64,000 nucleotides of DNA, taken from positions 146,733 through 210,732 of IMG/VR virus record IMGVR_UViG_3300031707_000001; one strand, written 5' to 3'. The translations under genes and the position numbers were made by a program. A model generated the notes under the pieces. It was not told the origin of the DNA and did no database searches. It was given only the letters and a program-made list of their open reading frames with translations. This document shows positions 36,875 to 55,847 of this stretch, one piece after another; the first letter of the stretch is position 1, and each line of letters opens with the position of its first letter.

Positions 36875-37969
36875 ATGAAAATCGTACACACTGCGGATCA
36901 TCACCTGGGCTATCGCCAGTATGGCTTTGCCCAGCGAGAAGAAGACTTCATGAAAGCCTTCCGCCACGTCATTGAGCGTGCCGTGGCGTTGAAAGCAAAT
37001 ATGATCATTATTGCTGGTGATCTCTTTGATATACCTAAGCCAGCCGCTTACGTGGTACAGGGCGTATGTGAAGCCATAGCTTATGCTAAGGCGGCCGGAC
37101 TGTACATAGCTGGCATTGACGGCAATCACGACGTTACCAGCGGTAATTGGTTAAAGGTCTGTGGCATTAACGATCTTGAAACCAGTGAAAAAGAGCCCCG
37201 CAGCTATAGCTATATGGGTGTTACGATCGCAGCGCTGCCATATTTGCGTCCGACCGTATTCAAAGATCGTCTGAAGAAAATGGCGGATGCCGGTATTAAG
37301 GCCGAGGTCTTTGTCATGCATCAAGCCGTAGCCGAGATGGCTGATTTTGCCGCACAGGAGATTACGCTTATGGAGATTGCTCCGTGGTTGAATCAAATGG
37401 GCGTACGGTATGTAGCTATGGGTGACATCCACAACTACAAGGAAATGGAATTCGCCGGCATTCGCTTTGTCTATGCTGGATCCACTGAGGTATGTGCCAT
37501 CGACGAACACAGGGACAAGAGTTTCTCGATCGTTGAATTTGGTGCACACAATGCAATGACGACGGCAACAGAACCTATACCGATTCGCCCCGTTGTGGAA
37601 CGCTACCTACAATCGGAAAAGGACCTGGACGAGTTGCTGGTGCAGCTTGCCGGCGATCCTTTGGCCATTCTGTGGTACGAGCCGGAAAAGGCGGATCTTG
37701 CCAGACGGGCAGAAGCCCTGCTCCTCGACAAGAAGATCCTTCATCGGATTTGTCCCACGGCAGCAAAGAGCCTGGCTACGATTACAGCACAACTGAATCG
37801 TGAGCAGCTTGAACGAAAGGGCGCCCTCATACGATTGAAGGATGCTGTGAATGCATTCTTCGAAGACAACAGTGAGCAACAAGAACTCATATACCAGTTA
37901 TTGAATACTCCAGATGCAGTGGAAAATACAGTAAAAGCATATCTATCGTCCAAAGGGGTACTACCATGA
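36875..37969 (+). CDS. sbcD: SbcD/Mre11-like nuclease
   Basis: ADHHLG, AGDLFD, GNHD, MHQ, GDIH and YAGS motifs. Confidence 0.92.
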   Translation: MKIVHTADHHLGYRQYGFAQREEDFMKAFRHVIERAVALKANMIIIAGDLFDIPKPAAYVVQGVCEAIAYAKAAGLYIAGIDGNHDVTSGNWLKVCGINDLETSEKEPRSYSYMGVTIAALPYLRPTVFKDRLKKMADAGIKAEVFVMHQAVAEMADFAAQEITLMEIAPWLNQMGVRYVAMGDIHNYKEMEFAGIRFVYAGSTEVCAIDEHRDKSFSIVEFGAHNAMTTATEPIPIRPVVERYLQSEKDLDELLVQLAGDPLAILWYEPEKADLARRAEALLLDKKILHRICPTAAKSLATITAQLNREQLERKGALIRLKDAVNAFFEDNSEQQELIYQLLNTPDAVENTVKAYLSSKGVLP

Positions 37970-38241: not shown

Positions 38242-38551
38242 AACATCCAAAACAAGCACAAGAAAGACAGTCATTCTGGGAGGATACGGAGCGCAGGTAC
38301 ATGCCGAGCGAGATGCTCAGGAATTCATGCGCCCGGATGTCTTCCAGTACAAGACAGCCTTCTTTGCCAACCCTATCAACTTTGGCATTGAAGCCAAGGT
38401 GACCAAGGCGGAAGCAATCAAGGTAGATAAACCCGATAGTCCGCTCTATCCGTGGGGCGTCAAGATGACAGTCAGTGCCAAAGGACCGAAAGCGGTGAAC
38501 TGGATGACTGACTTCGAAAACCGCATTCGGATACATCGGGTCAACAGATGA
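38234..38551 (+). CDS. Hypothetical protein
   Basis: Coupled ORF overlapping both neighbours. Confidence 0.6.
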   Translation: MPKTSKTSTRKTVILGGYGAQVHAERDAQEFMRPDVFQYKTAFFANPINFGIEAKVTKAEAIKVDKPDSPLYPWGVKMTVSAKGPKAVNWMTDFENRIRIHRVNR

Positions 38552-40746
38552 AGTTAAAGAAGTTAGTTCTTCACAACTATAAGCAGCATCCCCACCTGGA
38601 ACAGGATTTCGTCGGGAACGTAATCGGTATTGTCGGCCGTAACGGTTCTGGTAAGTCCAACCTTCTGGGTGGGTTGCAGTTTGCTTTTGCCGGTGAACAG
38701 CCTGGTTTCAACAAGGTAGATCTTCTGAGTTGGGGTTCCACGGACGGATATGTCCAGGTCGATTTCGACCACGCAGGGAAGCCCGGGCACATTGAGAGAA
38801 GCCTGACAGGAAGCTATGCGCTGTTCACATACGGCGACGAAACTTATCGGGGAATCAACAAAGTTGGGGAAGGCATCCAACTTCATCTTGGTCTGGACAA
38901 GGACCTGCTCAAGCAGGCTATCTTTGTTCGCCAGGCAGAAATTGATTCTATCCTCTTTGAGGATCCCCGGGAACGAGAGTTGGCATTCCAGAAGCTTTGT
39001 GGAATTGGCGATGCTGCTAAGATCCATAAGAAGCTGGGTGACGAACTTGTCAAGCTAAGCGTATTGCCGCCCAACTACGATGAGCAGATTGCTGAAGGGC
39101 AGAAGCGTTATAGTGAGATGGCTGATCGTTTACGGCAGCTCAAAGACACGGCAGACGCTGCTGCATCCCAACACGCCAAACTGCCCAAGTTGGCTTCACT
39201 GCAGGGTACGATCATGTCGTATGCCAGTATGCTAAATACCCTGGGGCAATACGTTAAGATCAGCAACGACCTGGCACAAGTCAAGGTCCGGCTGGTGGAA
39301 CTTGAAGACAAGCTGTTGATTACTCCAGATAATGGAACCGAGGATATTGGTAAGCTCGATCAACAGCTGGTCGAACTCGATAAGTCTATTCGTTTGGTAG
39401 AGGAGTATCAACGATGTCTCAAGAGCTTCGAGGATTCCGGTAATGCTATTGTAGCATTAGGGGATACCCCTAAGCCGCCGACGTTGCCGTTTACGGATGC
39501 ACAGCTTGTTGAGCTAATGCAGAAGGCAGAAGCTTTCAATAAGGCATATGCCGACGCAGCGGCTAACGAACGTCTTTATGCCGATTTGGCTCGAACGCTA
39601 AAGGACAAGCCGCTTACGGAATGTCCAATCTGTGGTGGTCCCATCAAAGACTTACAGCGTATCCAACAGAAAATGCAAGAGTATCACGTGCAGACGATTA
39701 ATATTTGTAGGGTCAACTATGCAGCACAGCATCACGAGGCAAAGACCAAGCAAGAGCAAGCCATTGCCGCCTACATGGAAGCAAGTACACGCTACAACGC
39801 AAAGTATGCTATGCTGCTGGCTCAGTTTGGTAAAGCTGAAACAGCTATGAAGTCGGCGCCAAAAGTCAACCAAGCCTTGACAGAATTGACGGCTGCGGCG
39901 CAGCGTGCTCAGGAAAAACGTACACAGTTGACCAAGCTTCTACGGGAGATCAGTGCTCAGCAACAGGAACGCAAAACCTGTGGACAACGTATTGAACAGT
40001 TGTCCAAGGAACTAAGTTGCCTGCATACTACAATCCTGGGTATGGAAGACGTGGCCAAACAGCTAACGTTGGGTGTAAATACTGTGCCCGGTTACATTCA
40101 ACGATGTATGGCACAGTTGAATGAACAGATTACACAGATCCAGGCATTGGATCAGCAACTGGCGCAACTCAACGGAATGATTCGAGAATTGGCTAACAGC
40201 CTTCAAATATTGGAAGATACGCTTAAAGCGTTGGATGACAAACGTGCTAAAGAGGGCCCGTTTAGGGCAACGCTCAAAGTGTTAACCGAGGTCCGTGACT
40301 GGTTTCACTACAACAACGGACCACATACGTTGGCTACAGCAGTATTGGCAGAAATGAACCAGGATGTGAATAGCTTCTTGGGACAGTTCTCCGCTCCGTT
40401 CTCTGTAATCCAGGGCTCGGAATCACTTGGATTCAAATGTATCTTCCACGATGGTCGAGCCGTACCTTCGGAACCACCGGATGCACACCACCTATCGGGA
40501 GGACAGAAGATCCAGTTGGCGATAGCATTTCGATTCGCCAGTTACTGTATGTTTGCAAGTAAACTGGGCCTCTTGAGTCTGGATGAACCTACCGTTTATC
40601 TCGACGACCAAAATGTAGGCGCCTTTTGTACGTTGCTTCAAAAGATAAAGGAAGTAGCACAAAAGATGGACCTGCAAGTTTTGATAGCCACGCATGAGCG
40701 GGCTGTTATGCCGTTTATTGATACAGTAATCAGCTTAGCTGATTGA
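38548..40746 (+). CDS. sbcC: SbcC/Rad50-like ATPase
   Basis: GRNGSGKS, coiled coil with CPIC hook, LSGGQ, LDEPT and ATH motifs. Confidence 0.93.
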   Translation: MKLKKLVLHNYKQHPHLEQDFVGNVIGIVGRNGSGKSNLLGGLQFAFAGEQPGFNKVDLLSWGSTDGYVQVDFDHAGKPGHIERSLTGSYALFTYGDETYRGINKVGEGIQLHLGLDKDLLKQAIFVRQAEIDSILFEDPRERELAFQKLCGIGDAAKIHKKLGDELVKLSVLPPNYDEQIAEGQKRYSEMADRLRQLKDTADAAASQHAKLPKLASLQGTIMSYASMLNTLGQYVKISNDLAQVKVRLVELEDKLLITPDNGTEDIGKLDQQLVELDKSIRLVEEYQRCLKSFEDSGNAIVALGDTPKPPTLPFTDAQLVELMQKAEAFNKAYADAAANERLYADLARTLKDKPLTECPICGGPIKDLQRIQQKMQEYHVQTINICRVNYAAQHHEAKTKQEQAIAAYMEASTRYNAKYAMLLAQFGKAETAMKSAPKVNQALTELTAAAQRAQEKRTQLTKLLREISAQQQERKTCGQRIEQLSKELSCLHTTILGMEDVAKQLTLGVNTVPGYIQRCMAQLNEQITQIQALDQQLAQLNGMIRELANSLQILEDTLKALDDKRAKEGPFRATLKVLTEVRDWFHYNNGPHTLATAVLAEMNQDVNSFLGQFSAPFSVIQGSESLGFKCIFHDGRAVPSEPPDAHHLSGGQKIQLAIAFRFASYCMFASKLGLLSLDEPTVYLDDQNVGAFCTLLQKIKEVAQKMDLQVLIATHERAVMPFIDTVISLAD

Positions 40747-40780: not shown

Positions 40781-42292
40781 ATGAGTGAAACAACAATAGA
40801 TAAAGAATTAGCTCCAGCAATCCAACAGATGACTGCTTTGTACAAGCAGCTCATGGAAAAACTGGGACAAGCAACGCCGGAACTGAAGGTCATAAGGGTT
40901 AAGGCTTCGGCCAAAACCAAAACGTCCAAACGTTGCATAGCACCTCAGTTGGTGCATGAGTTTGTCGAATGGTTTATCAAAACACCAGAAGATCAACTCT
41001 ATAATGTGAAACGGGGACAATGGGAATGCAAAGTGGGTGACTCTGTATCTAAGACAGCACATACGCTGGTCTTCCACAGTAGGATTACCAAAAACCGTGT
41101 AGATGCTGCAGACGTAATCTGCATCCGTCCTCCGGGCGTCAAGTTGGCTATTTTCAATGCCAGCCGAATCGCCTACGGTACGTCATATGCCGCACAAAAG
41201 GAACCACAAGCCATTGCCGAACGCTGTGGGGCAGTTCCTATTCCGTTCCAGAACGTAGTAGCCAAGGACCCCAAGACCGGTGCGGGTTTGGATTTGACCA
41301 AACTGCAACTGATCGAATGGGGCGGTTCTGAAAAGATGGTAATTCCACCGATAGAAAAGCAACGGTGGGGTAGTGTAGATTTCCACGTTATCAACCGGCA
41401 CTTTGCCGGCGCCGTGGTTATCAGTGTTGGGGAGAGGTACTTCCTGTTCGATGCCGATCGGGAAGAGTTGCAATGGTGTGGGTTTAATCCCTTCTTCACC
41501 CAACTGCCACACGCTGTCAGTACCATCGGAGAAGCCTATGCAAGCTTGCAGCCACCGGAAGTGACTCGGGCTATAGCAAAAAGAAAAAAGGTTATACGCC
41601 AAGGTGAATTGTTCTTCGTTCCAGAGGACCAAGATCCTTTGGAAAAGAAATTTACGCCTGATGCGCAGTCGAAGTTCTTCTATGAACAACTTTGTGAGCG
41701 TATCGATCTGTCCGGAGCAACTACGTATAACGCCTGGCGCTATATGCAAGACGAACAGGTCCAGAAATTCCTGGGGCTTTGTAAGAACAATAACAGGGGT
41801 AAGCTACCCGACAGTGAATTAGTAGATGCTGACGAGGCAACTGCCAAACTGCGTACGTTGTTGGAGAATGAAGTAGGGCCAAAAGAAGCGACGTATGATC
41901 CAGAGGATAAAGAAGCGATGAGTGGAACCGTCTGGGGTCGAGGTAGTCACGAGATTGGATATCGTTACCATCTGCATGGTGAAGTACGTGCCCGATTGCG
42001 TGCAGAATCTACTTACTCAAAAGAGGGTGGACGGATATTGAAACCCACAGCAGGACGTTTTCCGTTCTTGTATGCTGCTACCATCGGGGACAGCACAAAC
42101 GGTACGCAGCGTCACAGTCCGACAGTCATGTACTGTCCGGAAGGTATGGGATCGAAAAATCCCACGATTTATGTCAGGGGAACTGTGTTCCATCTGGGGC
42201 GTGAGCATCGTCCGGTTTATTTGCCGGGATGGCATCGAGTATATCCAAATACTGCTGTTCATAACTGGACAGTCAGTGGGGATGTCGACTAA
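40781..42292 (+). CDS. Hypothetical phage protein (RQGE/RQGD-motif type)
   Basis: RQGELFFVP and C-terminal H..REH.PV.L.GWH. Confidence 0.6.
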   Translation: MSETTIDKELAPAIQQMTALYKQLMEKLGQATPELKVIRVKASAKTKTSKRCIAPQLVHEFVEWFIKTPEDQLYNVKRGQWECKVGDSVSKTAHTLVFHSRITKNRVDAADVICIRPPGVKLAIFNASRIAYGTSYAAQKEPQAIAERCGAVPIPFQNVVAKDPKTGAGLDLTKLQLIEWGGSEKMVIPPIEKQRWGSVDFHVINRHFAGAVVISVGERYFLFDADREELQWCGFNPFFTQLPHAVSTIGEAYASLQPPEVTRAIAKRKKVIRQGELFFVPEDQDPLEKKFTPDAQSKFFYEQLCERIDLSGATTYNAWRYMQDEQVQKFLGLCKNNNRGKLPDSELVDADEATAKLRTLLENEVGPKEATYDPEDKEAMSGTVWGRGSHEIGYRYHLHGEVRARLRAESTYSKEGGRILKPTAGRFPFLYAATIGDSTNGTQRHSPTVMYCPEGMGSKNPTIYVRGTVFHLGREHRPVYLPGWHRVYPNTAVHNWTVSGDVD

Positions 42293-42293
42293 A

Positions 42294-42325
42294 ATACAGT
42301 GCAACAGTAAAACAGTGATACAGTG
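42294..42325 (+). repeat. Four tandem 8-nt NNACAGTR units
   Basis: ATACAGTG CAACAGTA AAACAGTG ATACAGTG. Confidence 0.7.
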
Positions 42326-42367
42326 TAAGTAGATACGTTCAAACAACAAACAAAGAGGTTAGTTAAC

Positions 42368-43051
42368 ATGAGTGACACAAGTCTAGTAGTACCGTCCGAA
42401 ATCACCCTGCGTCACCGGTCCGATGATTGGACCGAGGGGCAGGTTAGGGCCGAAACCGAGCAGTTGAGAAAGGCGAAGGCCGTTCTCTTCCTCGACAAGG
42501 TCCAGCACGAGAAGACGATCAAAGAGCTTGAACCCAAGCTTGAAGATCTGAAGCTGGAACTCGCCAAAGTGGAAAAGGCGATCAACAAGGCAGCAGAGCT
42601 TGAAATTGGAGACATGAAACTCAATGAAGAGTTTGCTGATGTCAAGAAAGCACTGCGGGTCCTGAAGATCAACAAATTCGTTTGTGCGATTGAGCTTGTC
42701 TCTGTGAACACTGAAGACGCCGAAATCGTTTTCAGGCGCAGTGTCGGAGACAAAGAAAGCACTTATCGGTATAACGTGCTCTCCGGCGAGGATACCATGA
42801 AGTTCACGTTCGAGATGAAGGAACTGAAAGGCCAGTGGAAAGAACTGACCAATAAGATCCAAGAAATCGAACGTACGCTTCTGGAGGCTCGTACAGCTCT
42901 GCGTGATCGGGCGAATCGTATGTCGGACGTGGAAGGGGCCATTGCCCTGAAGAACCTCAACGAGGACGAGCGGGTAGAGGTGAAAGAGCTGTATCAGCAG
43001 CTTGCCACCGGCCTGAACGCTCAGAAACTCCTAAACGAGAAGAAGGGCTGA
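42368..43051 (+). CDS. Coiled-coil protein
   Basis: E/K/L heptads; GAGG RBS. Confidence 0.7.
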   Translation: MSDTSLVVPSEITLRHRSDDWTEGQVRAETEQLRKAKAVLFLDKVQHEKTIKELEPKLEDLKLELAKVEKAINKAAELEIGDMKLNEEFADVKKALRVLKINKFVCAIELVSVNTEDAEIVFRRSVGDKESTYRYNVLSGEDTMKFTFEMKELKGQWKELTNKIQEIERTLLEARTALRDRANRMSDVEGAIALKNLNEDERVEVKELYQQLATGLNAQKLLNEKKG

Positions 43052-44028
43052 TGTACGCTCTTATTCCATGTCCCGAAGGCATCTCGAAAGATATCAAGAG
43101 CAGCCTTCGAGCAGCTGATATGTACGAGGGGTTCTGGCTGGTCAGCCAGGACCCCTCCCTTATCTCCCAAGCGGGCGAAAATGTTATTTGTGCTGCTACT
43201 AAGGAAGGACTGGCAGACATTGTTGACCGCAAGTTTGGTTTGCCTTATGGTTATAGTCGGCTGTCATTGCATGACCATACGTCAATGTATCACTGGGAAA
43301 ACTCCAACTACAATCATGGCGACGAGCCGGCCATAGCGAAGGCAAAGCGTGAGTTTGTAGCCAAGTGCTTGAAAAATGGTGATCGCAATTGGCTGATTTA
43401 TGCTTTGCTACCAACACCGAGAGTAGTCGATACTAAACTACACGAATTGGATATTCTGGCAGAATCCAAGTGTCATCCTAAAGGGATATACACAAACCGG
43501 TTTAAGCTACAGGGCAACCACAAAACAGACGTTGTCAAGGAAGACTTTGTTGTGGAAGACAGTCCGCTTGGAACTCGGGTAATGTACAATCCCAAACGAG
43601 CCAAACGTTTGGCTGCTATCCGTCGGCGTCATTGCTCAGTAGGGCAGCGTAAACCTAAGCGTACGTGTTACCACTTGCTTAATCTAATGGTTAGAGCATT
43701 AAGGGAGACAATCGATTGTCAGACCATTACTAACCTATATAGAGAATGGCGGTCAAGTCAGGGTATACACAACACGAGTGGTGGCGTAGTTAATTTCTTT
43801 GACATGGCCAAGCGTATGGGCAAGTTGGCTACAGCCAGAAAAAAGATCAAGCCTTTACTCAAAGAGCTTTGGGTACATAAGAATCTGATACAGCACAATT
43901 GTTCGGCCGAGTTTCGAATATGGTATGCAAAAGAGATCGAGATAGCGGGTGGAACACCTAAGGATACCGAACGCTACATAACGAGGGTTAAAAGTGAGAA
44001 CATTCAAAAAGATTCTGAAAAAACTTGA
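43051..44028 (+). CDS. Hypothetical basic protein
   Basis: TGATG-coupled 325-aa ORF. Confidence 0.65.
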   Translation: MYALIPCPEGISKDIKSSLRAADMYEGFWLVSQDPSLISQAGENVICAATKEGLADIVDRKFGLPYGYSRLSLHDHTSMYHWENSNYNHGDEPAIAKAKREFVAKCLKNGDRNWLIYALLPTPRVVDTKLHELDILAESKCHPKGIYTNRFKLQGNHKTDVVKEDFVVEDSPLGTRVMYNPKRAKRLAAIRRRHCSVGQRKPKRTCYHLLNLMVRALRETIDCQTITNLYREWRSSQGIHNTSGGVVNFFDMAKRMGKLATARKKIKPLLKELWVHKNLIQHNCSAEFRIWYAKEIEIAGGTPKDTERYITRVKSENIQKDSEKT

Positions 44029-44362
44029 TACTCGAAAATTCAAGAAGCCAACGGGTAACCTGGAAAATATGTACACCGTTGCTTACTGGAATCTCTGGAA
44101 CCAATTTGGCGTGACACCGAAACTGGTGGAACAGGCCAAAAAGAAAGGCAAGGAGATTTCGGTAACGGATTATGCTTGGACAAAACAAGCCAAGGAACAA
44201 TACTATGCGCATCCTTATATTCAGCTTTTCATGAAGAAGCTGGATAATAGAGGCATGGCACATGGCATGTGGGTACTTCAAGCGGAGCCCGCTGATTATG
44301 AAGACCATCTTCGCTGGGAAGCTCAAAGAGCTACGCAAGAAAAAGTGGCTCAGTCGAAGTGA
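43994..44362 (+). CDS. Hypothetical protein
   Basis: GTG start with GAGG RBS. Confidence 0.55.
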   Translation: MRTFKKILKKLDTRKFKKPTGNLENMYTVAYWNLWNQFGVTPKLVEQAKKKGKEISVTDYAWTKQAKEQYYAHPYIQLFMKKLDNRGMAHGMWVLQAEPADYEDHLRWEAQRATQEKVAQSK

Positions 44363-44591
44363 GCTGGCAGAACGTTCGAATCTGTGTTACCGGTCTATCA
44401 AGTACTATGAGGCCGGTCACATCGTTCCTACGTCAGCCAGTTTTAACTGCTTGCTCCTGGGATTGGGGGCCTCCGACGAGGAGGCCCTCGATCTCCGGGT
44501 AGCTTGGATGGAAACTAAACAGTCAGGTTCTTCCATGCTCAACGTGCGTTACGACCTGAACGGTAATGCAAAAAGTGATTGCATTTCATAA
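44298..44591 (+). CDS. XRE-family HTH regulator
   Basis: KLKELRKKKWLSRSELAERSNLCYRSIKYYEAGHIVP. Confidence 0.85.
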   Translation: MKTIFAGKLKELRKKKWLSRSELAERSNLCYRSIKYYEAGHIVPTSASFNCLLLGLGASDEEALDLRVAWMETKQSGSSMLNVRYDLNGNAKSDCIS

Positions 44592-44647
44592 CTGTAATCA
44601 GGTAAGATACTTGTGTCGAACTTGAAAAACGCATATTAAGGAGAAGT

Positions 44648-45157
44648 ATGAAAGACGCATCATGGACTGTAGAGTTCAATACACATGTACTAGCGAACGG
44701 CATTGGGCCCAAGGGCGAAAGAGACCACTTCCAACGAGATAACCTCAACAATCTTATCTGGCAACAGAGCTGGTGGTATTCCGCTTTTACTCAAGCTATT
44801 GAACTTGCTCATATGCATCGTATCAAAGCGGCCGACATACACATGAACCTGGCCGTCAAAGCAACCACGGATCTTTACCGTAGACGATACGGGGATGACA
44901 AGTTTCGGATCCATGAGGCAATCATGCCCGGTACGAGGGTCACATTTGAGGCAGTTGTAGCTGACCACGTAACCAAATCAAATCTTGAAGCAATACTTGA
45001 CAAAATGGGTAAATATGTGGGATTATCCCCGTATGGTTACAGATTGGGATTTGGAAAATTCAATGTATGCAGTGTGGAGGTAGCATCCAGTGACAATGAA
45101 AACAGTGAAGCAAGCGGAGATCGTCAACCTGAGGCTCCAGCAGAGAAAGCCGGTTGA
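44648..45157 (+). CDS. Stand-alone RAMP (Cas7/Csm3-like) fold protein
   Basis: HEAIMPGTRVTFEAVV strand, helix, then C-terminal Gly-rich loop GKYVGLSPYGYRLGFGKFNV; AAGGAG RBS. Confidence 0.6.
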   Translation: MKDASWTVEFNTHVLANGIGPKGERDHFQRDNLNNLIWQQSWWYSAFTQAIELAHMHRIKAADIHMNLAVKATTDLYRRRYGDDKFRIHEAIMPGTRVTFEAVVADHVTKSNLEAILDKMGKYVGLSPYGYRLGFGKFNVCSVEVASSDNENSEASGDRQPEAPAEKAG

Positions 45158-45263
45158 CGAAAACTGTTACTATACATTAGGCTTCAAAGCTGCCTGCGAG
45201 CGACGTAGGAAATCGCCTGCACAAGTTCTCGAAGCTGCAGTGTTGTTAGATTTGCATTTGTAA
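45096..45263 (+). CDS. 55-aa hypothetical protein (not in ORF track)
   Basis: MKTVKQAEIVNLRLQQRKPV...VLLDLHL; GGAGG upstream; alternative in-frame GTG at 45090. Confidence 0.4.
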   Translation: MKTVKQAEIVNLRLQQRKPVDENCYYTLGFKAACERRRKSPAQVLEAAVLLDLHL

Positions 45264-45294
45264 TACAGTCTCGGGCTTCACCGTTGCGTTCAAG

Positions 45295-45323
45295 CGATAT
45301 GGCTGTGCTATATCGTTGTTTTT
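45295..45323 (+). terminator. Possible terminator/attenuator hairpin
   Basis: GCGATATGGC-TGT-GCTATATCGT followed by TGTTTTT. Confidence 0.55.
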
Positions 45324-45337
45324 GAATAGGAAGGACT

Positions 45338-46918
45338 ATGGCTACGAATATCATTCTAGAATGGGGTGATGGCTATTTGGCCGTTACACCCGAAGTTCCT
45401 GATTTCCTCCGTAATGCTTTGCGCTACTGGCACCGATCGTTGAATCGAGAAGAAGGCAGAGCAGCACTTGTAGCGACCGGTGAGTACCGGGAGCTTTATA
45501 GCATTTCTGGACAGATCACACCCGACAATCGCTTTGAACAACGTTTGGTTACCCTTCCTGGATTTCTTTGTCGGATAAAGAATCTCTTGAAGGGTCAGGG
45601 CTATGATTTTGCCATTGTGGATAAACGCACGCCAGCGCCCACACCTGACTACGCTAAAGCGTTCGAAGGCTTGCGGGAATATCAATGTGCTTGCGCTTAT
45701 GCAGCACTGGCTTCCGGCGGTGGCATTGTAGCCTGTCCGACAGGCTGGGGCAAAACCCATATCATTGCATCTATCATCAAGGCATATAGCTCTGATGAAC
45801 TGTGTATGCGGAACACACCTAAGGTGGTTGTGGCCACGCCAGAACAGGACATTACCCGCAAAGATTTCAATGATCTGGTAACCTTGTTACCCGATCGTGA
45901 TATTGGCCTGGTCATGACTGGCGCCAAGCATTTCAGCGATGACGTGCAAGTGATTACTCTTCAAAGTTTGCACCTGATCGATTGCAACGATATCGGTATT
46001 TTCATTGTAGATGAAGTGCATACAGCTGCCTCCGAAAAACGTATGGAAACCATCATGGCAGCCCGGCGTGCCCTCAAGTGGGGTGTCAGCGCCACGCCAT
46101 CTGGACGGTATGACGGCCGGGATCTTGTAACAGAAGGTTTGTTTGGTCCGGTTGTTTACCAGCGAACGTATGCTGAAGGCGTAAACGATGGGGCCCTCGT
46201 GCCCATCACCGTTTATTGGCTGAGAGCACCGGCGCCCGAACATACTCGTAACTTGCATCATGCAACTGCACTAGGGCTGGAAAACTACATGAAATTCAAG
46301 ACTCGTTCGGGCAAATACCGTAACGGGCTAGATCGCAATGACGATTACAATCAGTTGGTAGCTGAATTGCTTCGTAGAATTCCGACTGAGTTGCAGACCC
46401 TTTGTATTCTTCAGCATCTTGATCACATGGACAAGCTGGTCCATCATTGCAACGATATCAAGATCATGCATGCAGAAGAGAGTTCAGATAATCTGGCCAA
46501 GAATGGATATACGCACTTGGTGCCTGTATCCAAACGGGAACGTAAGCAAGCGTACGAGGATATGTTCTCCGGTGCCTGTCGGAAAATCATCAGTACATAT
46601 GTATACAAGCAGGGCGTAAACTTTCCACAACTCACGGTAGTCGTCAATGCAGGCGGAGGCGGCAGCGACATTGTGGCCAGACAAATCCCGGGGCGGGAAA
46701 GCAGAAACATTGGAGAAGTAAAACCCCAAGCCTACTTGGTGGATTTTGTGCATGAATGGGATACAGTCACCGATAAGAACGGCCGTCCTCGTCCTGGGCC
46801 TATCCTCAAAGACGATAAGTCTCGGGAGAAATCATATTCCGATCTTGGGTTTACTCAAGTGTGGGTGGATACTTTGGACGAATTACCATTCTTGAAGGAT
46901 AAAAATGGACCTAACTGA
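45338..46918 (+). CDS. Superfamily 2 helicase (UvsW/XPB-like)
   Basis: LREYQ, PTGWGKT, DEVH, SATP, QGVNFP and QIPGRESR motifs. Confidence 0.9.
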   Translation: MATNIILEWGDGYLAVTPEVPDFLRNALRYWHRSLNREEGRAALVATGEYRELYSISGQITPDNRFEQRLVTLPGFLCRIKNLLKGQGYDFAIVDKRTPAPTPDYAKAFEGLREYQCACAYAALASGGGIVACPTGWGKTHIIASIIKAYSSDELCMRNTPKVVVATPEQDITRKDFNDLVTLLPDRDIGLVMTGAKHFSDDVQVITLQSLHLIDCNDIGIFIVDEVHTAASEKRMETIMAARRALKWGVSATPSGRYDGRDLVTEGLFGPVVYQRTYAEGVNDGALVPITVYWLRAPAPEHTRNLHHATALGLENYMKFKTRSGKYRNGLDRNDDYNQLVAELLRRIPTELQTLCILQHLDHMDKLVHHCNDIKIMHAEESSDNLAKNGYTHLVPVSKRERKQAYEDMFSGACRKIISTYVYKQGVNFPQLTVVVNAGGGGSDIVARQIPGRESRNIGEVKPQAYLVDFVHEWDTVTDKNGRPRPGPILKDDKSREKSYSDLGFTQVWVDTLDELPFLKDKNGPN

Positions 46919-47504
46919 CGAAGTAGGCTATCGGGCATGGGACGAATACTATACCCAATTGCAAAGCCGGCTTGGGTCGGGGCGTGGACGTAGTGCTTAT
47001 TGGACACATAAGCACTACAAGAACTTTCGCCGGATAGCTGATATTTGCATTCAACATAGTTTCGAGGTAACGGATTATGTGATTCGTGCCTTCGACTTGT
47101 TGGAAAAGAACAGCCAATATATTACCCCTAAGGATTTGACAGATCCAGAATTGGTGGAGAATTACAAACAACACCTTAAGAAGTATGGCTATGAAATACA
47201 GCTGAGTCATACGATGCAAATTCAGCAATTAACAGATTTGGAAACCCGTTTGGTTCCAGAAAAATACCCGTCTGAAGAAGCCATTCTCTTAGATATCAAT
47301 ATGGTATTTGAATCTTGGTTCCGTATGTTACATCCTGAAAAATTCAGTGAAGCAATATTCATGGTCTATGGACAGTTGGCGTGGTCGGAACTGTCAGGTA
47401 GTCAAAAACTCAGGGATTACGCCAGAAGTAAGTACGTAAAGAATTTTCAGGAACTGGAAAACAGGTTGGGGAAATTCCTCGATCTCGGCGGAGGTACAAG
47501 ATAG
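46905..47504 (+). CDS. Hypothetical replication-module protein
   Basis: Coupled between the two helicase genes. Confidence 0.65.
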   Translation: MDLTDEVGYRAWDEYYTQLQSRLGSGRGRSAYWTHKHYKNFRRIADICIQHSFEVTDYVIRAFDLLEKNSQYITPKDLTDPELVENYKQHLKKYGYEIQLSHTMQIQQLTDLETRLVPEKYPSEEAILLDINMVFESWFRMLHPEKFSEAIFMVYGQLAWSELSGSQKLRDYARSKYVKNFQELENRLGKFLDLGGGTR

Positions 47505-47505
47505 C

Positions 47506-48957
47506 ATGAATTTGTATACTAAAGATTTCCAAGTCCAACTGCTGGTACATCTGGCAAAGGACGAAGACTTCTTCCGCAAGACTGGCTACTTGCGCCTGGA
47601 AGATTTTGAAATGGTAGCTTGTCAATTTGTTTTGGAGACACTGCGGGATTACTATGCCAAATTTCACAAACTGCCAGACTTCAATCTGCTGCAAACGCAT
47701 ATAGGTTACATGTTGACTGGCGCCAGAACAGTCACGCAGTTGATTCCCGAAGAACTGCCAACCGTAGCCTACATCATGGAATCTATAGCTACGGCTTCGT
47801 TGAACACAACGTACTACATAGCACAGTTGCCGGAGTTTTTGAGATTCGTGCGTCTGACACAACAAATCCGTTTGCACGGGGATACCCTCAAACAGGGATT
47901 ACCGGTTGACGAACTGATTACGGCAATATCAAAGATCAACACAGACGTTGCTGCCTGTGACGACGACGAAGATGACGACGATATGTGGGGTAATCCGGAA
48001 CCAATACTAGATCGGATTAAACATGTACGAGTACCTACGCCTTTACAGCATCTAAACAACTACACTTCAGGTGGGTTAGGTTTGGGCGAAGTCGGCATGG
48101 TAGTTGCCTGTCCGGGGGTAGGTAAAACGACAAGTCTTATCAACTTCCAGGCATATGCTGTTCAGAGTGGCATACGCACGTTATTCCTATCATTGGAATT
48201 AACCAAGGTACGTATTAAGTATCGTTATCAGGCAATCTCAGCACATATTCCAGCAAACTACTACAAAGTAGAAATGAAGGATTGGCCGCCAGACGTGCTC
48301 TACCGTTATTCTCTATTCACCAATCCAGAGTACAAATATTTCGGTTATTGCAAAGTCAGAGACATGTCCAAACGTCATCCGGCAATTGCCGAGATTGAGC
48401 GTATGATTGTACGCTGGCTGGAGAAGGCTGAAAAGCTTGGCAAACGGCACGAATGCAAACTCGTACTGATCGACTGGCTTGACTATATTGATCCAGCAGG
48501 CATTTCGCTTTCCAAGACAGCCCGGGATGACGTCATCCTGATGAAGATATTGGAACAGCTGGGCATGTTGGCTCGCAAGTACAACATAGCTATTTGGACG
48601 GCTACACAAGGTACTCGGCAGGCCGATGGTGTCGAGAACCTGCAGATGAAGCATACAGCGCAGGGTTATCATAAGAACGACCCTGTGGATATCAGCGTTG
48701 GTCTGGCTGCCATTGATGCGATGGGACGAGAATTACAAGAAGCCAAGACATCGGACGATGACCAGGTGCGTCCGGTCTGCGATCGGGATCTGAAACTCAG
48801 TATCATGAAAAACCGGGACAATCCACCCGTCTTCTTTCCGTTTTATCAAGGTCCAACTCTGCGACACTGGAACAACCGGAAGGAATCTAGTACTGTGGAC
48901 CAGGTCTTGAGCGCCGGAAAAATGGAAGAAGCTGAAAAGGTGTTGATCAAACCATGA
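47506..48957 (+). CDS. dnaB: DnaB-like replicative helicase
   Basis: PGVGKTT, LSLEL, LIDWLD, WTATQ and MKNR motifs. Confidence 0.88.
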   Translation: MNLYTKDFQVQLLVHLAKDEDFFRKTGYLRLEDFEMVACQFVLETLRDYYAKFHKLPDFNLLQTHIGYMLTGARTVTQLIPEELPTVAYIMESIATASLNTTYYIAQLPEFLRFVRLTQQIRLHGDTLKQGLPVDELITAISKINTDVAACDDDEDDDDMWGNPEPILDRIKHVRVPTPLQHLNNYTSGGLGLGEVGMVVACPGVGKTTSLINFQAYAVQSGIRTLFLSLELTKVRIKYRYQAISAHIPANYYKVEMKDWPPDVLYRYSLFTNPEYKYFGYCKVRDMSKRHPAIAEIERMIVRWLEKAEKLGKRHECKLVLIDWLDYIDPAGISLSKTARDDVILMKILEQLGMLARKYNIAIWTATQGTRQADGVENLQMKHTAQGYHKNDPVDISVGLAAIDAMGRELQEAKTSDDDQVRPVCDRDLKLSIMKNRDNPPVFFPFYQGPTLRHWNNRKESSTVDQVLSAGKMEEAEKVLIKP

Positions 48958-49928
48958 ACCTAGCATACCTAGAACAAGTAATTCGGACGAAGTTCGGTAA
49001 GTTCAAAAAGTCTCGTGGAAAACACGGACTGGAATATATCGTACGTTGTCCTTATTGCCACAAGATGGACAAGTTATATCTGAACCCGGCACTGGGAACC
49101 TACCTATGTTTCCGTTGTGGCGAGACAGGTGGACTATCCACTTTGTTGGGCGTGATTGATCAACTCAATAAGGAAATAGCCGTACCTACCTATGCACCTA
49201 TGCCAACCGATGTAGAGATGCCAGGCAATCTGGTGGAGTTGAATGTGTTGGCGTCGGATCATCCGGCAATACGCTACATCAAACATCGTGGGTTCGACCC
49301 CCAAGAGTTGAACGATGTCTTTGGCGTACGCTATTGCACGAACGGTAAGACCTTTGCACATATTTTCAATACGACCAACTCACTGATCTTCCCCATGTGG
49401 ATGCACAGCAAGTTGGTGGGTTGGCAGTCCAGGTTGCTCTACACTCCGGACGAAATGACGGACCAGGAATGTGAACAGATGGGCTTTGCCAAAGACTCCG
49501 ATGGGGACTGGATAAAGCCTCCCAAATATTGGACGAGTCCAGGTTTGCCGAAAGGCCAGATTCTGTTCAATTACGATTGGGCCAGCAAGAGCGAAGTCGT
49601 GGTGCTTTGTGAAGGTACCTTTGACGCCATGGCAGTAGGCCGCTCAGGTGTTGCTGCCCTGGGCAAGGGCGTTACAGAATATCAGACCCGTCTGATTGCC
49701 AATACAAGCACCTGGAAGTTGGCAGTATTATTGCTTGACCCAGGCGATGCAGATAAAGAGATGCTCCAGTTGACACGCACGTTGGCGACCAACATGGATT
49801 ATTTGGAAGTGCAGTTGCAGGGATACAAAGATGCCGGCGAGACGCCCCGCCTGGAAATATGGGCGCAGATCGGACAAGCAGCCTACGAGACGGGCAAAGA
49901 CTTGTTCAAATATAGGATGATCATATGA
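48954..49928 (+). CDS. dnaG: DNA primase (Zn finger + TOPRIM)
   Basis: CPYC..CFRC, PKY, CEGTFDA, LLDPGD and KDAGE motifs. Confidence 0.88.
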   Translation: MNLAYLEQVIRTKFGKFKKSRGKHGLEYIVRCPYCHKMDKLYLNPALGTYLCFRCGETGGLSTLLGVIDQLNKEIAVPTYAPMPTDVEMPGNLVELNVLASDHPAIRYIKHRGFDPQELNDVFGVRYCTNGKTFAHIFNTTNSLIFPMWMHSKLVGWQSRLLYTPDEMTDQECEQMGFAKDSDGDWIKPPKYWTSPGLPKGQILFNYDWASKSEVVVLCEGTFDAMAVGRSGVAALGKGVTEYQTRLIANTSTWKLAVLLLDPGDADKEMLQLTRTLATNMDYLEVQLQGYKDAGETPRLEIWAQIGQAAYETGKDLFKYRMII

Positions 49929-53581: not shown

Positions 53582-54308
53582 TAAAAGGGATTGCCATAGT
53601 TAGGTGATTGTGCTAAATTGTATCTATGAAAAAGATAATCAAATATCTAATTTGTGTGGACTGCCAAAAACAGTTCCGTTTCATAGGTAGAACTAAGGCA
53701 TTGCGCTGTGTATCGTGTCGTCGTAAGTATGCGAGTAAATATCAAATGCTTTGGCGACTAGCTCGGAATCCATCCATACAAATGGGTGTTGGTAGCGGGG
53801 GACATCAATGGCGTAAGGACAATCACATGTGGAAAGGTGGAAAACGTCCGAAATATATTGGTAACTACCGAAGCCGATGCTTTAGGCGTTGGCAACGTCG
53901 ATGTGTTATTTGTGGGAGTACTCGTGGAATCCACGTGCATCATGCTGATGGCGATACCGCTAATTTGCATGTATGTAATTTGATTCCTGTGTGTACACGA
54001 CACCACAAACAATTGCATCGATCCAAAGGCAGACTTACCAAAACGGAACGTTTAACACTGCTCTTCAAATTATGGCCTAAAGGCCGAAGTAAAATTGCGG
54101 AACTAAGCGGGAACCCTGAAATGGGAATCCGAACCGAAGGCTGTAATGTTTATGCAGTACAGTCAGGGGCAACGACTAGGGGTGAGGAAACAATAATCCC
54201 CCAAGAGGCCGCAACATCATGAAGTTACATGGTGAAAAGATAGTCTGGGCTGCAACGAAAAACAAGTTGCAGAATTGTTGGATAAAAAGCCAACAAGTTA
54301 ACAAACCG
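53582..54308 (+). mobile_element. Group I intron 1 in polA (727 nt)
   Basis: Exon ends in U and intron ends in G; IGS GGGATTGCC (P1 with GGT, P10 with ATCCC); P3 TTGCGG/CCGCAA; P7 GACTA/TAGTC; splicing restores NFG-IPYG. Confidence 0.92.
53626..54222 (+). CDS. Intron-encoded HNH endonuclease
   Basis: CVICG...HVHHADGDTANLHVCNLIPVCTRHH. Confidence 0.9.
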   Translation: MKKIIKYLICVDCQKQFRFIGRTKALRCVSCRRKYASKYQMLWRLARNPSIQMGVGSGGHQWRKDNHMWKGGKRPKYIGNYRSRCFRRWQRRCVICGSTRGIHVHHADGDTANLHVCNLIPVCTRHHKQLHRSKGRLTKTERLTLLFKLWPKGRSKIAELSGNPEMGIRTEGCNVYAVQSGATTRGEETIIPQEAATS

Positions 54309-54587: not shown

Positions 54588-55571
54588 TAAACAGATGAAT
54601 AGGGGAAATAAAACGGGGTGAATTCAGGGAAAGCCGGATAACAGAATATCTGCTATTGACATTAAATACGCAATAAGGTATTGTAGCAGATATTGGTAAT
54701 CCTGAGCCTAGCCAGTGAAGTGATTTGCTGGAAGGTGCAACGACTAGCACTCGAGTCTTGTAGAAGACAGTAATAGTGCCACGAGCGCCCTGACTCAGAA
54801 TCGAAACTGAGTATGATATAGTCTGGACTGATACAACTGTTAGGTGTGTATGAAATTGTGTAAAGACTGCGGCAAAGAACCTTGTTTGAAAATGCTGATA
54901 AAGCATAACTCCGAGTATTATCCTCGGTGTCAGGCCTGTGATAGAAAATATAACCGTGAACGTGCTAGAAAACTTAGATTGAAAGCGCAGAAAAAAGAGT
55001 TACTTCAAAATTCCAAACTTGAGAAAACAGGCTGGAAACGCTGTAGTAATTGCTTTAAGAAAAAGACGCTATTTGAGTTTTCGACACGCTACGGTAAGCG
55101 AGGAGGTAAACTGCATAAGATTTGTGATACTTGTCTTTCCCGGTTGTTAGCTAGCAACCGAAAAGATATGGATCAGTTTACCCCCAAATTTTGGCGTTCG
55201 AGGGCCTATGCTTGTAACTCAACATATCGGTATCATCAAAAACGATTGAAACAACGAGTAGTTCCGCTTGCTGATTTAGCGTATGTCATAAAACCTCAAC
55301 AGTTAGTTGAGTTATACAAAAAGCAAGATGGTAAGTGCTGCTATTGCTACGTAACGTTGACCACACGTAATCTTTCTTGTGATCACGCTATTGCAATCGT
55401 TAATCAAGGTTCACATCACATTAGAAATATTCGACTAACGTGTCGGGATTGCAATAATCTTAAATGGACACGTAACGAAAACGAATTTGTCGAATTTTTA
55501 AGAGTCTACGCACAACGAATACTCGAAGTATCAGAATTGCGGGATAAAGAACCTGCAAGATAACACGAACG
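54588..55571 (+). mobile_element. Group I intron 2 in polA (984 nt)
   Basis: P1 TTCCCT/GGGGAA with U-G; P10 TGAAT/ATTCA; P4 CAGG/CCTG; P7 GACTA/TAGTC; terminal G; splicing restores NFP-IQSTVAD. Confidence 0.92.
54850..55563 (+). CDS. Intron-encoded HNH endonuclease
   Basis: QDGKCCYC...CDHAIAIVNQGSHHIRNIRLTCRDCNNLK. Confidence 0.9.
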   Translation: MKLCKDCGKEPCLKMLIKHNSEYYPRCQACDRKYNRERARKLRLKAQKKELLQNSKLEKTGWKRCSNCFKKKTLFEFSTRYGKRGGKLHKICDTCLSRLLASNRKDMDQFTPKFWRSRAYACNSTYRYHQKRLKQRVVPLADLAYVIKPQQLVELYKKQDGKCCYCYVTLTTRNLSCDHAIAIVNQGSHHIRNIRLTCRDCNNLKWTRNENEFVEFLRVYAQRILEVSELRDKEPAR

Positions 55572-55847
55572 ATTCAAAGTACAGTCGCTGATACCTGCAT
55601 GATAGCCATGATACGCATGCGACAGTACCGGACGAAGTATGGGCTCCACTTCCGCATCATCAATCAGATTCACGATGCAGTAATGGTGGAAACCCCCGAA
55701 AACGAAATCGAAGCTACGAAAACGATGTTTAAGGATACAATGGCCAACATAAAAATACCAGTGACTAACAGTGAACCATTGATATTGGGAATAGATATCT
55801 CGATACTGGATCGCTGGGGTCAGAAAAGAAGTAAGAAAGAGGACTAG
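55572..55847 (+). CDS. polA: DNA polymerase A exon 3
   Basis: IQSTVAD...QIHDAVMVE (motif C). Confidence 0.92.
   Translation: MQSTVADTCMIAMIRMRQYRTKYGLHFRIINQIHDAVMVETPENEIEATKTMFKDTMANIKIPVTNSEPLILGIDISILDRWGQKRSKKED

What the first reader, a model, noticed from the sequence alone, without database searches (positions are those of the whole stretch)
44298..46918. Orphan RAMP/Cas7-like gene between an XRE regulator and an SF2 helicase, with no CRISPR array
Seen: the 169-aa ORF 44648-45157 has the order of elements of a minimal RAMP: an N-terminal strand with His (VEFNTHVLANG), FQRD..LIWQQSWWYSAF in the position of the IPGSSxKG helix, HEAIMPGTRVTF, and a terminal Gly-rich loop GLSPYGYRLGFGKF. 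It has a possible promoter (TTGCAT-18-TAAGAT, 44579-44608), a small partner ORF and a downstream hairpin. Known: Cas7/Csm3 RAMPs polymerise on guide RNA. Inference: a non-CRISPR RNA-binding or RNA-guided phage effector, or a crRNA-sequestering anti-CRISPR. The candidate RNAs in this window are possible ligands. No adjacent guide array was found.
Basis: partly seen in the sequence, partly recalled or inferred. Interest (0 to 1): 0.8.

Follow-up and report, generated by a model that had tools for sequence, protein, structure and literature searches.

The report
Solo Vipr-like RAMP beside phage helicase
A small phage protein with the fold of CRISPR's Cas7 backbone subunit, distantly related to the recently described viral guide-RNA protein Vipr, sits with no guide-RNA array nearby as a fixed neighbour of a DNA helicase in the replication/recombination operon of a large group of uncultured phages (the longest contigs are about 200 kb), which hints at a job for this ancient fold that does not use a neighbouring guide array.

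Summary
The AlphaFold2 model (pLDDT 89.7) matches Csm3, Cmr4 and type VII Cas7 chains (Foldseek E down to 4e-7). By sequence, its only solved relative is SUSP1 Vipr, the RAMP of the VIPR systems described in 2026. A profile comparison with canonical Vipr gives 95.7% probability over 145 columns.

It is not a canonical VIPR. I found no 5-nt-periodic vrRNA array or any other repeat array in the 64-kb window, in an 18-kb extension, or in about 60 related loci. The same scans recover the SUSP1 arrays. The only array near a family member (L045) belongs to a canonical Vipr cassette inserted next to it.

The gene has a fixed place in an operon: SbcD, SbcC, (variable genes), RAMP, XPB-like SF2 helicase, P199, DnaB, primase, PolA. 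This order holds down to 25% identity, and the helicase follows in 40 of 41 loci. Sister lineages with the same helicase family lack the RAMP and also lack the helicase's N-terminal domain.

Best reading: a Vipr/Cas7-superfamily RAMP with no array nearby, acting as a nucleic-acid-binding partner of the helicase. The function is inferred, not shown.

The parts
44648..45157 (+). RAMP-R: a 169-aa minimal RAMP of the Vipr/Cas7 superfamily. The core is residues 1-145, followed by an unconserved, mildly acidic tail.
   Evidence: AF2 pLDDT 89.7. Foldseek hits to Csm3/Cas7/Cmr4 with E down to 4e-7. hhalign against canonical Vipr gives 95.7% probability. Family of 158 clusters at 50% identity.
45338..46918 (+). 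XPB/Rad25-like SF2 helicase, the constant downstream partner. Its N-terminal ~66 residues (45338-45535) co-occur with the RAMP.
   Evidence: ResIII/DEAD/Helicase_C. PDB XPBII 1e-11. Follows the RAMP in 40 of 41 loci. N-terminal domain detected in 9 of 11 RAMP-positive helicases against 0 of 20 RAMP-negative ones.
45090..45263 (+). Small conserved 57-aa protein that overlaps the RAMP's 3' end. Present only in a subset of the clade.
   Evidence: Alignment A3: 29-65% identity with 7 invariant positions. Absent from compact loci where the RAMP stop overlaps the helicase start.
45293..45317 (+). Terminator-like hairpin followed by a T-run, between the small ORF and the helicase.
   Evidence: The spacer as a whole is not unusually structured.
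46905..47504 (+). P199: a conserved all-helical protein between the helicase and DnaB. Function unknown; a helicase-loader role is only a guess from its position.
   Evidence: Synteny. AF2 pLDDT 92, all-alpha. No significant PDB fold match.
47506..48957 (+). DnaB-like replicative helicase.
   Evidence: DnaB_C 4.5e-12; phrog_19 5e-41.
48954..49928 (+). DnaG-type primase.
   Evidence: phrog_47 1.5e-37; Toprim and zinc ribbon.
36875..37969 (+). SbcD-like nuclease subunit, at the start of the conserved module.
   Evidence: phrog_100 4.5e-14. Metallophos in related loci.
38548..40746 (+). SbcC-like ATPase. It lies directly upstream of the RAMP in compact relatives.
   Evidence: phrog_77 5e-35. SbcC lies upstream in 26 of 28 loci, and within 110 nt in 7 of them.
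44298..44591 (+). XRE-like HTH gene. Part of a variable insertion (40781-44591) between SbcC and the RAMP, not a conserved partner.
   Evidence: Weak HTH_31/HTH_3 and phrog_8 matches. Homologues only in L014 and L015 and in the same genome.

Best explanation
RAMP-R is a very small RAMP (RRM core, helix 1, thumb hairpin, G-loop). It is a remote homologue of the viral Vipr protein and a structural relative of Cas7/Csm3. In this phage lineage it works without a guide array encoded nearby. I propose that it binds single-stranded nucleic acid through the usual RAMP surfaces (helix 1, G-loop, thumb). The substrate would be ssDNA or the RNA strand of R-loops or primers produced during SbcCD-dependent end processing and replication. 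It probably binds as an oligomer and acts as a dedicated partner of the adjacent XPB-like SF2 helicase, docking on that helicase's lineage-specific N-terminal domain.

Shown: the fold; homology to Vipr; absence of arrays within about 44 kb upstream and 37 kb downstream; fixed gene order with the helicase; highest conservation in the G-loop; co-occurrence with the helicase N-terminal domain.

Inferred: nucleic-acid binding, oligomerisation, physical contact with the helicase, and the role in recombination or replication.
For: Fold: AF2 pLDDT 89.7. Of 101 PDB matches with E<=1e-3, nearly all of the 50 listed are Csm3, Cas7, Cmr4 or Cmr1 chains. ESM Atlas structural neighbours include PF03787 RAMP clusters at TM 0.62-0.67.

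Homology: the only PDB sequence hit is SUSP1 Vipr. hhalign of A2 against the Vipr profile A4 gives 95.7% probability, E 9e-9, over 145 columns. Weak Csf2 and Cas7_IIId matches cover the G-loop region.

No guide: scans that recover all four SUSP1 vrRNAs find nothing in the window, in the 18-kb extension, or in about 60 related loci. Compact loci have no intergenic space around the gene.

Operon: the order SbcD-SbcC-RAMP-helicase-P199-DnaB-primase-PolA is kept down to 25-27% identity. The helicase follows in 40 of 41 loci. The RAMP is usually at least as conserved as HEL, DnaB and SbcC in the same loci, for example 74/60/50/51% in L006 and 63/54/29/43% in L008.

Binding surface: the G-loop is the most conserved element and the core is basic, with median pI 8.9.

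Coupling: the helicase N-terminal domain is found in 9 of 11 RAMP-positive helicases and 0 of 20 RAMP-negative ones.
Against: There is no direct evidence of nucleic-acid binding, oligomerisation or helicase contact. Sister lineages with the same helicase family lack the RAMP; there the slot holds a 335-aa unknown protein, ThiF/ThiS-like genes, or nothing. The helicase therefore does not universally need it. The co-occurrence test used a profile built from RAMP-positive sequences and is not phylogenetically corrected. The conserved H89-E90, R79, D26/D31 and D106 are not explained by simple backbone binding and could mean catalysis or base-specific reading. Only about 82 of about 211 kb of this genome was scanned. 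The VIPR paper states that some VIPR types have helicase accessory genes, so a guide I did not recognise remains possible.
Confidence: 0.4

Rival explanations
1. It is a genuine VIPR effector: an RNA-guided DNA binder whose vrRNA lies far from the gene or has a form my scans cannot see. The helicase would then be its vap accessory protein.
For: Full-length remote homology to Vipr. The family is phage-encoded. The VIPR paper reports helicases and nucleases as vap genes in types III-V, degenerate repeat units (NNNNG), and systems with a single vrRNA. Non-canonical trinucleotide motifs are also known. About 61% of this genome was not scanned.
Against: The motif-agnostic 5-nt periodicity test detects the SUSP1 and L045 arrays but nothing else in roughly 430 kb of family loci plus the 82 kb of this genome. 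Compact loci leave no room for an RNA gene. In 120 array-bearing viral loci, the adjacent RAMP is always of the Vipr type and never this family. The SUSP1 GGY-reading residues H17, R138, D177 and R179 map to N/x, E90, P128 and G130; only W178 is matched, by the aromatic Y129. The gene behaves as a slowly evolving operon member, not as an arms-race gene.
Confidence: 0.2
2. It is an enzyme: a RAMP-fold endonuclease (Cas6- or Csm3-like RNase, or a structure-specific nuclease) that serves as the nuclease partner of the XPB-like helicase, in the way Bax1 partners archaeal XPB. It would act on R-loops, primers or branched intermediates.
For: Nearly invariant H89-E90 and R79 across the broad family, and conserved D26/D31 in the b1-helix 1 loop in the close clade. 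From memory, the b1-helix 1 loop is where Csm3's catalytic Asp lies. The helicase's closest solved relatives are the XPB chains from XPB-Bax1 entries. P199 gave no fold match to any nuclease. SbcCD, RNase H and EndoVII lie nearby.
Against: No Bax1 or other nuclease appears among the 50 listed fold hits. I could not make a residue-level superposition on the Csm3 or Cas6 active sites. D26, D31 and H13 are not conserved in the broad family. Most RAMPs are not catalytic.
Confidence: 0.15
3. It is a decoy: an anti-VIPR or anti-CRISPR protein that sequesters rival vrRNAs or host crRNAs.
For: The RAMP fold without its own array. It is smaller than Vipr, lacking the basic insertion after b1. VIPR conflicts among phages, including solo vrRNAs, are documented. 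One relative carries a VIPR cassette next to it.
Against: Fixed synteny and translational coupling with a helicase across the whole family. Conservation is usually at least as high as that of the neighbouring core replication genes, the opposite of typical anti-defence genes. The GGY-reading residues are not kept.
Confidence: 0.06

Closest known systems
Vipr protein of VIPR systems (Viral Interference Programmable Repeat; SUSP1 Vipr, PDB 36PP/36PK; bioRxiv 10.64898/2026.04.26.720920 and 10.64898/2026.04.26.720927)
   Same: Phage-encoded. A single small RAMP with an RRM core, helix 1, thumb and G-loop, with no other cas genes. It is the only solved structure found by sequence, and the profile-profile probability is 95.7% over the full length. 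Some VIPR types are reported to have helicase accessory genes.
   Different: No vrRNA array or any 5-nt periodic tract nearby, whereas arrays flank vipr in all published types. The core is about 45 residues shorter: it lacks the basic insertion after b1 and part of the segment carrying the thumb Arg. The GGY-reading residues are mostly replaced. It is embedded in a replication/recombination operon, not in a two-gene cassette. The two profiles separate cleanly: 38-217 bits against 17-30 bits.
CRISPR Cas7-family RAMPs (Csm3 of type III-A, Cmr4 of III-B, type VII Cas7, Csf2 of type IV)
   Same: Best structural matches: Foldseek E 4e-7 to 1e-4, TMq 0.5-0.6. Weak sequence matches to Csf2 and Cas7_IIId over the b3-helix 2-G-loop-b4 region.
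   Different: No CRISPR array and no Cas10, Cas5, Cas6 or other cas genes. The core is about 150 aa, against about 200-300 aa for the Cas7 chains matched. It reaches no Cas7 family threshold by sequence. It is viral and lies in a replication operon.
Archaeal XPB-Bax1 helicase-nuclease pair (PDB 6P4F, 6P4O, 6P4W, 6P66)
   Same: An XPB-type SF2 helicase encoded next to a small dedicated partner. The helicase here has its best solved-structure matches to these XPB chains.
   Different: The partner here has a RAMP fold, and no Bax1 appears among the 50 listed fold hits. No nuclease motif was demonstrated. This is an analogy of gene organisation only.

Membership tests
RAMP superfamily (structural) | RRM/ferredoxin-like core with helix 1, a thumb-like beta-hairpin and a C-terminal glycine-rich loop before the last strand | tested here: met
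   AF2 model pLDDT 89.7 with b1, helix 1, hairpin 75-92, b 97-104, helix 2, G-loop 125-137 and b4. Foldseek probability 1.00 to Csm3/Cas7/Cmr4. ESM Atlas TM 0.62-0.67 to PF03787 clusters.
CRISPR-Cas Cas7/Csm3 | Encoded with a CRISPR array and other cas genes (Cas10/Cas5/Cas6 etc.) | tested here: not met
   No tandem or direct-repeat arrays in the 64 kb. Neighbours are SbcCD, helicases, primase and PolA. PADLOC finds no cas genes.
CRISPR-Cas Cas7/Csm3 | Reaches a curated Cas7-family sequence model | tested here: not met
   Pfam RAMPs are not hit by any of 118 members. The NCBIfam Csf2 best score is 14.7 bits for the window protein against a cutoff of 130, and 5 of 118 members have E<0.1.
CRISPR-Cas Csm3 | Catalytic Asp in the b1-helix 1 loop for target-RNA cleavage | tested here: inconclusive
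   D26 and D31 are conserved in that loop in the close clade, but only D31 reaches the broad-family consensus. No residue-level structural superposition was available.
VIPR (Vipr protein) | Homology to Vipr proteins | tested here: met
   PDB 36pp_D at E 0.007 with profile A2. hhalign of A2 against a 39-sequence Vipr profile gives 95.7% probability, E 9e-9, 145 columns. The relationship is remote and forms a distinct branch.
VIPR (system) | vrRNA genes of tandem 5-nt units (GGY/NN or a related fixed motif, at least 4 and typically 9-16 units) with a 3' tail, flanking vipr | tested here: not met
   The scans recover all four SUSP1 vrRNAs and the six in L045. They find nothing from 44 kb upstream to 37 kb downstream in this genome or in about 60 family loci. 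The L045 array belongs to an adjacent canonical Vipr. The remaining ~129 kb of the genome was not scanned.
VIPR (Vipr protein) | Residues that read the GGY motif in SUSP1 Vipr (H17, R138, D177, W178, R179) | tested here: not met
   The alignments put N17 (variable), E90 (nearly invariant Glu), P128, Y129 and G130 at these positions, so only the aromatic is kept. The full-length hhalign instead leaves the R138 segment unaligned, so the mapping of R138 is uncertain. Other VIPR types may differ too.
VIPR (system) | Viral location and a compact operon with an accessory (vap) gene | tested here: inconclusive
   The family is viral or metagenomic only, with no match confirmed in a scan of 185,579 species' genomes using one G-loop peptide pattern. 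A helicase always follows, and helicase vaps are reported for some types. However, the pair is embedded in a long replication operon, and the paper's type tables were not available.
XPB-Bax1-type helicase-partner pair | Partner protein homologous to Bax1 | tested here: not met
   The 50 listed fold hits of the RAMP are nearly all CRISPR RAMPs. The helicase itself matches XPBII/Rad25.

The most novel reading that the evidence does not exclude
RAMP-R is a RAMP lineage that functions with no guide RNA, as a nucleic-acid-coating or R-loop-handling subunit of a helicase in phage replication and recombination. It would then be either a relic of what RAMPs did before they acquired repeat-encoded guides, or an exaptation of Vipr into genome replication. 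A more extreme version is that, together with the helicase, it uses a transcript to open or process specific DNA sites, giving RNA-assisted initiation or repair.
Probability: 0.25. Interest if true: 0.85.

Novelty: new variant of a known kind. Interest (0 to 1): 0.62.

Why it matters
RAMPs are the defining fold of class 1 CRISPR effectors. The 2026 VIPR work argues that viral Vipr proteins are the ancestral RAMPs. Every RAMP characterised so far works on a repeat-derived guide RNA.

This is a large, deeply diverged RAMP family: 158 clusters at 50% identity, on phage contigs of up to about 210 kb. It is even smaller than Vipr and has no array within the 20-kb distance the field uses to call an element solo. 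It is tied to an XPB-like helicase inside an SbcCD-DnaB-primase-PolA operon.

If it binds nucleic acid without a guide, it bears directly on what RAMPs did before or apart from guided targeting. It also provides a compact, testable protein-helicase pair. If it does use a hidden guide, it would extend VIPR to a new architecture with a helicase effector.

Tried and rejected
1. Curated libraries. Pfam, PHROGs, NCBIfam and PADLOC on the protein and on 118 family members gave no family assignment, only marginal Csf2 and Cas7_IIId matches.

2. Cultured phages. tblastn of the window protein and two distant members against 50,697 phage records found no match. Megablast of the locus found none either. 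The helicase and PolA have only 24-28% identical cultured relatives, so there is no model phage.

3. L045 array. I first read it as the family's own vrRNA array. I rejected that because a canonical Vipr (44% identical to SUSP1 Vipr over the C-terminal 54 residues, E 1e-10) and a T5orf172-type gene lie directly upstream of it.

4. L045 vrRNA tail motif in IMG/VR. One chance hit with no array and no related genes.

5. Scan of IMG/VR for seven perfect GGYNN units. I used its loci as a comparison set instead.

6. P0213, a 5,699-aa protein with three weak matches. It is a repetitive Gly/Thr/Ser-rich protein and the family profile does not hit it, so the match is spurious.

7. RNA evidence. No RNA run was listed for the locus; only sediment DNA runs hold it.

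8. P199 and P503. The Atlas gave nothing useful. The P199 model is confident but has no PDB fold match.

9. Period-5 power in L051 downstream of its RAMP fragment. This is a GGAAC x3 run inside the small-ORF coding sequence, not a vrRNA.

10. Rfam and tRNA scans of the window found nothing.

11. SSB-substitute idea, prompted by the acidic C-terminal tail. The tail is unconserved and absent from many members, so it is not evidence either way.
Full report
**Observation.** The ORF at 44648-45157 (+) encodes 169 aa and is preceded by AAGGAG at 44638-44643. It is not a chance ORF. A search of 5.8 billion proteins found 114 clusters (46-100% identical), all from metagenomes, some on contigs of 176-211 kb. 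An exhaustive search of 50%-identity representatives found 158 clusters with E<=1e-3, reaching about 25% identity, nearly all 140-200 aa long. Pfam and PHROGs do not recognise it, and no cultured phage carries it. Invariant or nearly invariant positions in the close clade are K2, H13, L15, D26, F28, D31, W42, R79, H89, E90, P94, G95, F100, D106, G121 and the loop G125-L-S-P-Y-G130-x-x-L-G-x-G136-x-F138. In the broad family, L15, E90, G121, G125, S127, G136 and F138 remain nearly invariant.

**Fold.** An AlphaFold2 model built on 48 sequences is confident (pLDDT 89.7, pTM 0.79). It shows b1 (2-10), helix 1 (40-53), a beta-hairpin (75-82 and 85-92), b (97-104), helix 2 (110-124), a loop (125-137) and b4 (138-145). 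Foldseek against the PDB gives 101 matches with E<=1e-3. Nearly all of the 50 listed are Csm3, type VII Cas7, Cmr4, Cmr1 or other RAMP chains of class 1 effector complexes (best 6xn3_F, E 3.9e-7, TMq 0.59). The best viral matches include a protein annotated as a Cas-associated RAMP. The ESM Atlas independently places viral hypothetical clusters nearest (TM 0.75-0.78), followed by PF03787 RAMP clusters (TM 0.62-0.67).

**Relation to VIPR.** A profile of 118 diverse members hits one relevant PDB sequence, the SUSP1 Vipr protein (36pp_D, E 0.007), across b3-helix 2-G-loop-b4. Vipr is the RAMP of the Viral Interference Programmable Repeat systems. These are phage-encoded. The protein polymerises on a vrRNA made of 9-16 YNNGG units plus a 3' tail, and it silences target DNA by non-contiguous pairing. 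Seven types are described, some with nuclease or helicase accessory genes, some with degenerate units, and some with a single vrRNA (structure; solo vrRNAs; non-canonical trinucleotide motifs). I located SUSP1 vipr (L004:2602-3189) and built a 39-sequence canonical Vipr profile. The profile-profile comparison with my family gives 95.7% probability, E 9e-9, over 145 columns from b1 to b4. The family is thus a remote, full-length homologue of Vipr. It is shorter, lacking Vipr's basic insertion after b1 and part of the segment that carries the thumb Arg. By sequence it is closer to Vipr than to any solved Cas7. It gives only marginal matches to Csf2 (5 of 118 members, best E 7.7e-4) and to Cas7_IIId (E 0.004).

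**Is it a VIPR system? The guide test.** I wrote scans for YNNGG, NNNGG, YNNNG and NNNNG tracts, plus a motif-agnostic test that counts fixed bases at three phases of a 5-nt period. Both recover all four SUSP1 vrRNAs, one upstream and three downstream of vipr, as published. In the 64-kb window nothing exceeds shuffled controls. Direct-repeat, tandem-repeat, Rfam and tRNA searches are also empty. I extended the same genome 18 kb past the window's end and again found no periodic tract and no second RAMP of either type. The gene therefore has about 44 kb upstream and 37 kb downstream free of arrays, beyond the 20-kb limit the field uses to call an element solo.

About 60 related loci, with up to 10 kb of flank, show nothing either. 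There is one exception, L045, where six CNNGG-type vrRNAs lie just upstream of the family's gene. That array follows a canonical Vipr gene (44% identical to SUSP1 Vipr over the C-terminal 54 residues, E 1e-10), which is itself preceded by a T5orf172/MUG113-type gene. This is the same layout as SUSP1, so I read it as a separate cassette inserted at that spot. In 120 array-bearing viral loci, 73 carry a Vipr-type protein. Every protein touched by my family's profile scores far better with the Vipr profile (38-217 bits against 17-30 bits). Finally, the SUSP1 residues that read GGY (H17, R138, D177, W178, R179) correspond to a variable position, a nearly invariant Glu (E90), P128, Y129 and G130. 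The full-length alignment leaves the R138 segment unaligned, so that one mapping is uncertain.

**Genomic context.** The gene sits in a replication/recombination operon: EndoVII-like, RNase H, SbcD, SbcC, (variable genes), RAMP, SF2 helicase, P199, DnaB-like helicase, DnaG-type primase, UDG-exo-PolA and, further on, a UvsX-like recombinase. This order is kept in relatives from 89% down to 25-27% identity. In compact loci SbcC ends 4-18 nt before the RAMP, and the RAMP stop overlaps or abuts the helicase start. The helicase follows in 40 of 41 loci with at least 800 nt downstream, and SbcC lies upstream in 26 of 28. The XRE-like gene, the three ORFs before it and P503 are variable insertions. 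The small ORF 45090-45263 is a real conserved protein but is restricted to a subset. By best-HSP identity, the RAMP is usually at least as conserved as the helicase, DnaB and SbcC in the same loci. The helicase's closest solved relatives are archaeal XPB/Rad25 (1e-11). P199 is a confident all-helical protein with no fold match.

**From the helicase side.** Searching viral contigs with a helicase alignment shows that sister lineages (27-32% identical helicases, on contigs of 44-216 kb) lack the RAMP. Between SbcC and the helicase they carry a 335-aa unknown protein, ThiF or ThiS-like genes, a DUF5983 protein, or nothing. The RAMP is therefore core within one large clade but is not a universal requirement of this helicase. 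The helicase's N-terminal ~66 residues are detected in 9 of 11 dereplicated RAMP-positive helicases and in 0 of 20 RAMP-negative ones (Fisher p about 3e-6). At comparable core divergence the counts are 3-4 of 5 against 0 of 9. The profile came from RAMP-positive sequences and the loci are related, so this is suggestive only. It does point to a physical link between the RAMP and that domain.

**Interpretation.** The most conserved parts of the protein are those that bind RNA in Cas7 and Vipr, above all the G-loop. The core is basic (median pI 8.9) and the C-terminal tail is unconserved. Combined with the missing array and the tight coupling to the helicase, my best explanation (confidence 0.4) is a RAMP that binds single-stranded nucleic acid with no guide array encoded nearby and serves the XPB-like helicase during recombination-dependent replication or R-loop and primer handling. 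The rivals are:
- A true VIPR effector whose guide I did not find (0.2). This stays open because 61% of the genome is unscanned and helicase vaps exist.
- A RAMP-fold nuclease partner of the helicase (0.15), suggested by the invariant H89-E90 and R79.
- An anti-VIPR or anti-CRISPR decoy (0.06), which fits poorly with the fixed synteny and slow evolution.

**Novelty.** RAMPs outside CRISPR have been known since the 2026 VIPR preprints, so the fold in a phage is no longer new in kind. What appears new is a large, separate, even smaller branch with no array nearby, fixed in a replication operon next to a helicase. I could not see the VIPR paper's type tables. I therefore cannot exclude that a few NCBI members of this family were counted within one of its types. 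I rate it a new variant of a known kind, with interest 0.62.

Noticed in passing
L045:4155-5812 (contig OFOT01000007.1): A complete canonical VIPR cassette lies directly upstream of the family's RAMP gene. It consists of a T5orf172/MUG113-type gene, a Vipr gene (about 4420-5013) and six tandem vrRNAs of CNNGG units. Each vrRNA ends in a conserved tail with a hairpin (GCCTCCGACATCGG...). Two distantly related RAMP genes thus flank one array.
   Followed up: partly
window:51401-53584 and about 55599-55847 (L251:1-1872 and 3887-4135): The UDG-exo-PolA gene looks split. A separate 82-aa ORF with a DNA_pol_A hit lies about 2 kb downstream of the 727-aa PolA, after intervening ORFs that include an HNH endonuclease (53626-54222) and an EndoVII/HNH-like gene (54844-55563). 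Relatives encode PolA proteins of 830-1068 aa.
   Followed up: no
L002:8999-11518; also L007, L009, L022, L024, L030, L031, L034, L048: In several relatives the helicase gene is interrupted or enlarged. L002 has an 839-aa product with Hom_end/Hom_end_hint intein domains. The other loci listed have 1.4-1.8 kb between the RAMP and the best-scoring helicase match, which lies in the C-terminal part.
   Followed up: no
L198, L200, L205, L213, L214 (slot between SbcC and the helicase); L045:1060-2257: ThiF/E1-like, ThiS/ubiquitin-like and JAB-like genes recur next to SbcC in these phage lineages. This suggests a phage-encoded ubiquitin-like conjugation module in the same variable slot.
   Followed up: partly
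window:44997-45026: The best sigma-70-like match in the locus (TTGACA-18-GATTAT, with an extended-10 TG) lies inside the RAMP gene, about 65 nt upstream of the small ORF's start. It could be an internal promoter for the small ORF and the helicase.
   Followed up: no
window:53626-54222, 54844-55563, 61713-62387, 35002-35628: The replication region is dense in HNH and EndoVII-type homing-endonuclease-like genes.
   Followed up: no
L063-L182 (120 IMG/VR loci): Of 120 viral loci with at least seven perfect GGYNN units, 47 showed no Vipr-type ORF within the fetched stretch. They could be solo vrRNAs, other Vipr types, truncated loci or chance matches.
   Followed up: no
P0304: A 170-aa 'marine sediment metagenome' UniRef protein is 46% identical to SUSP1 Vipr. 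It may be the VIPR paper's seed X1U2U4 or a close relative; I could not check the accession. If it is, the seed belongs to the SUSP1-like clade and not to the family studied here.
   Followed up: no
L051:1-570: This 1-kb contig carries only the C-terminal third of the RAMP ORF, in frame with unrelated sequence, opposite a 176-aa minus-strand ORF that I did not identify. It looks like a chimeric assembly.
   Followed up: no
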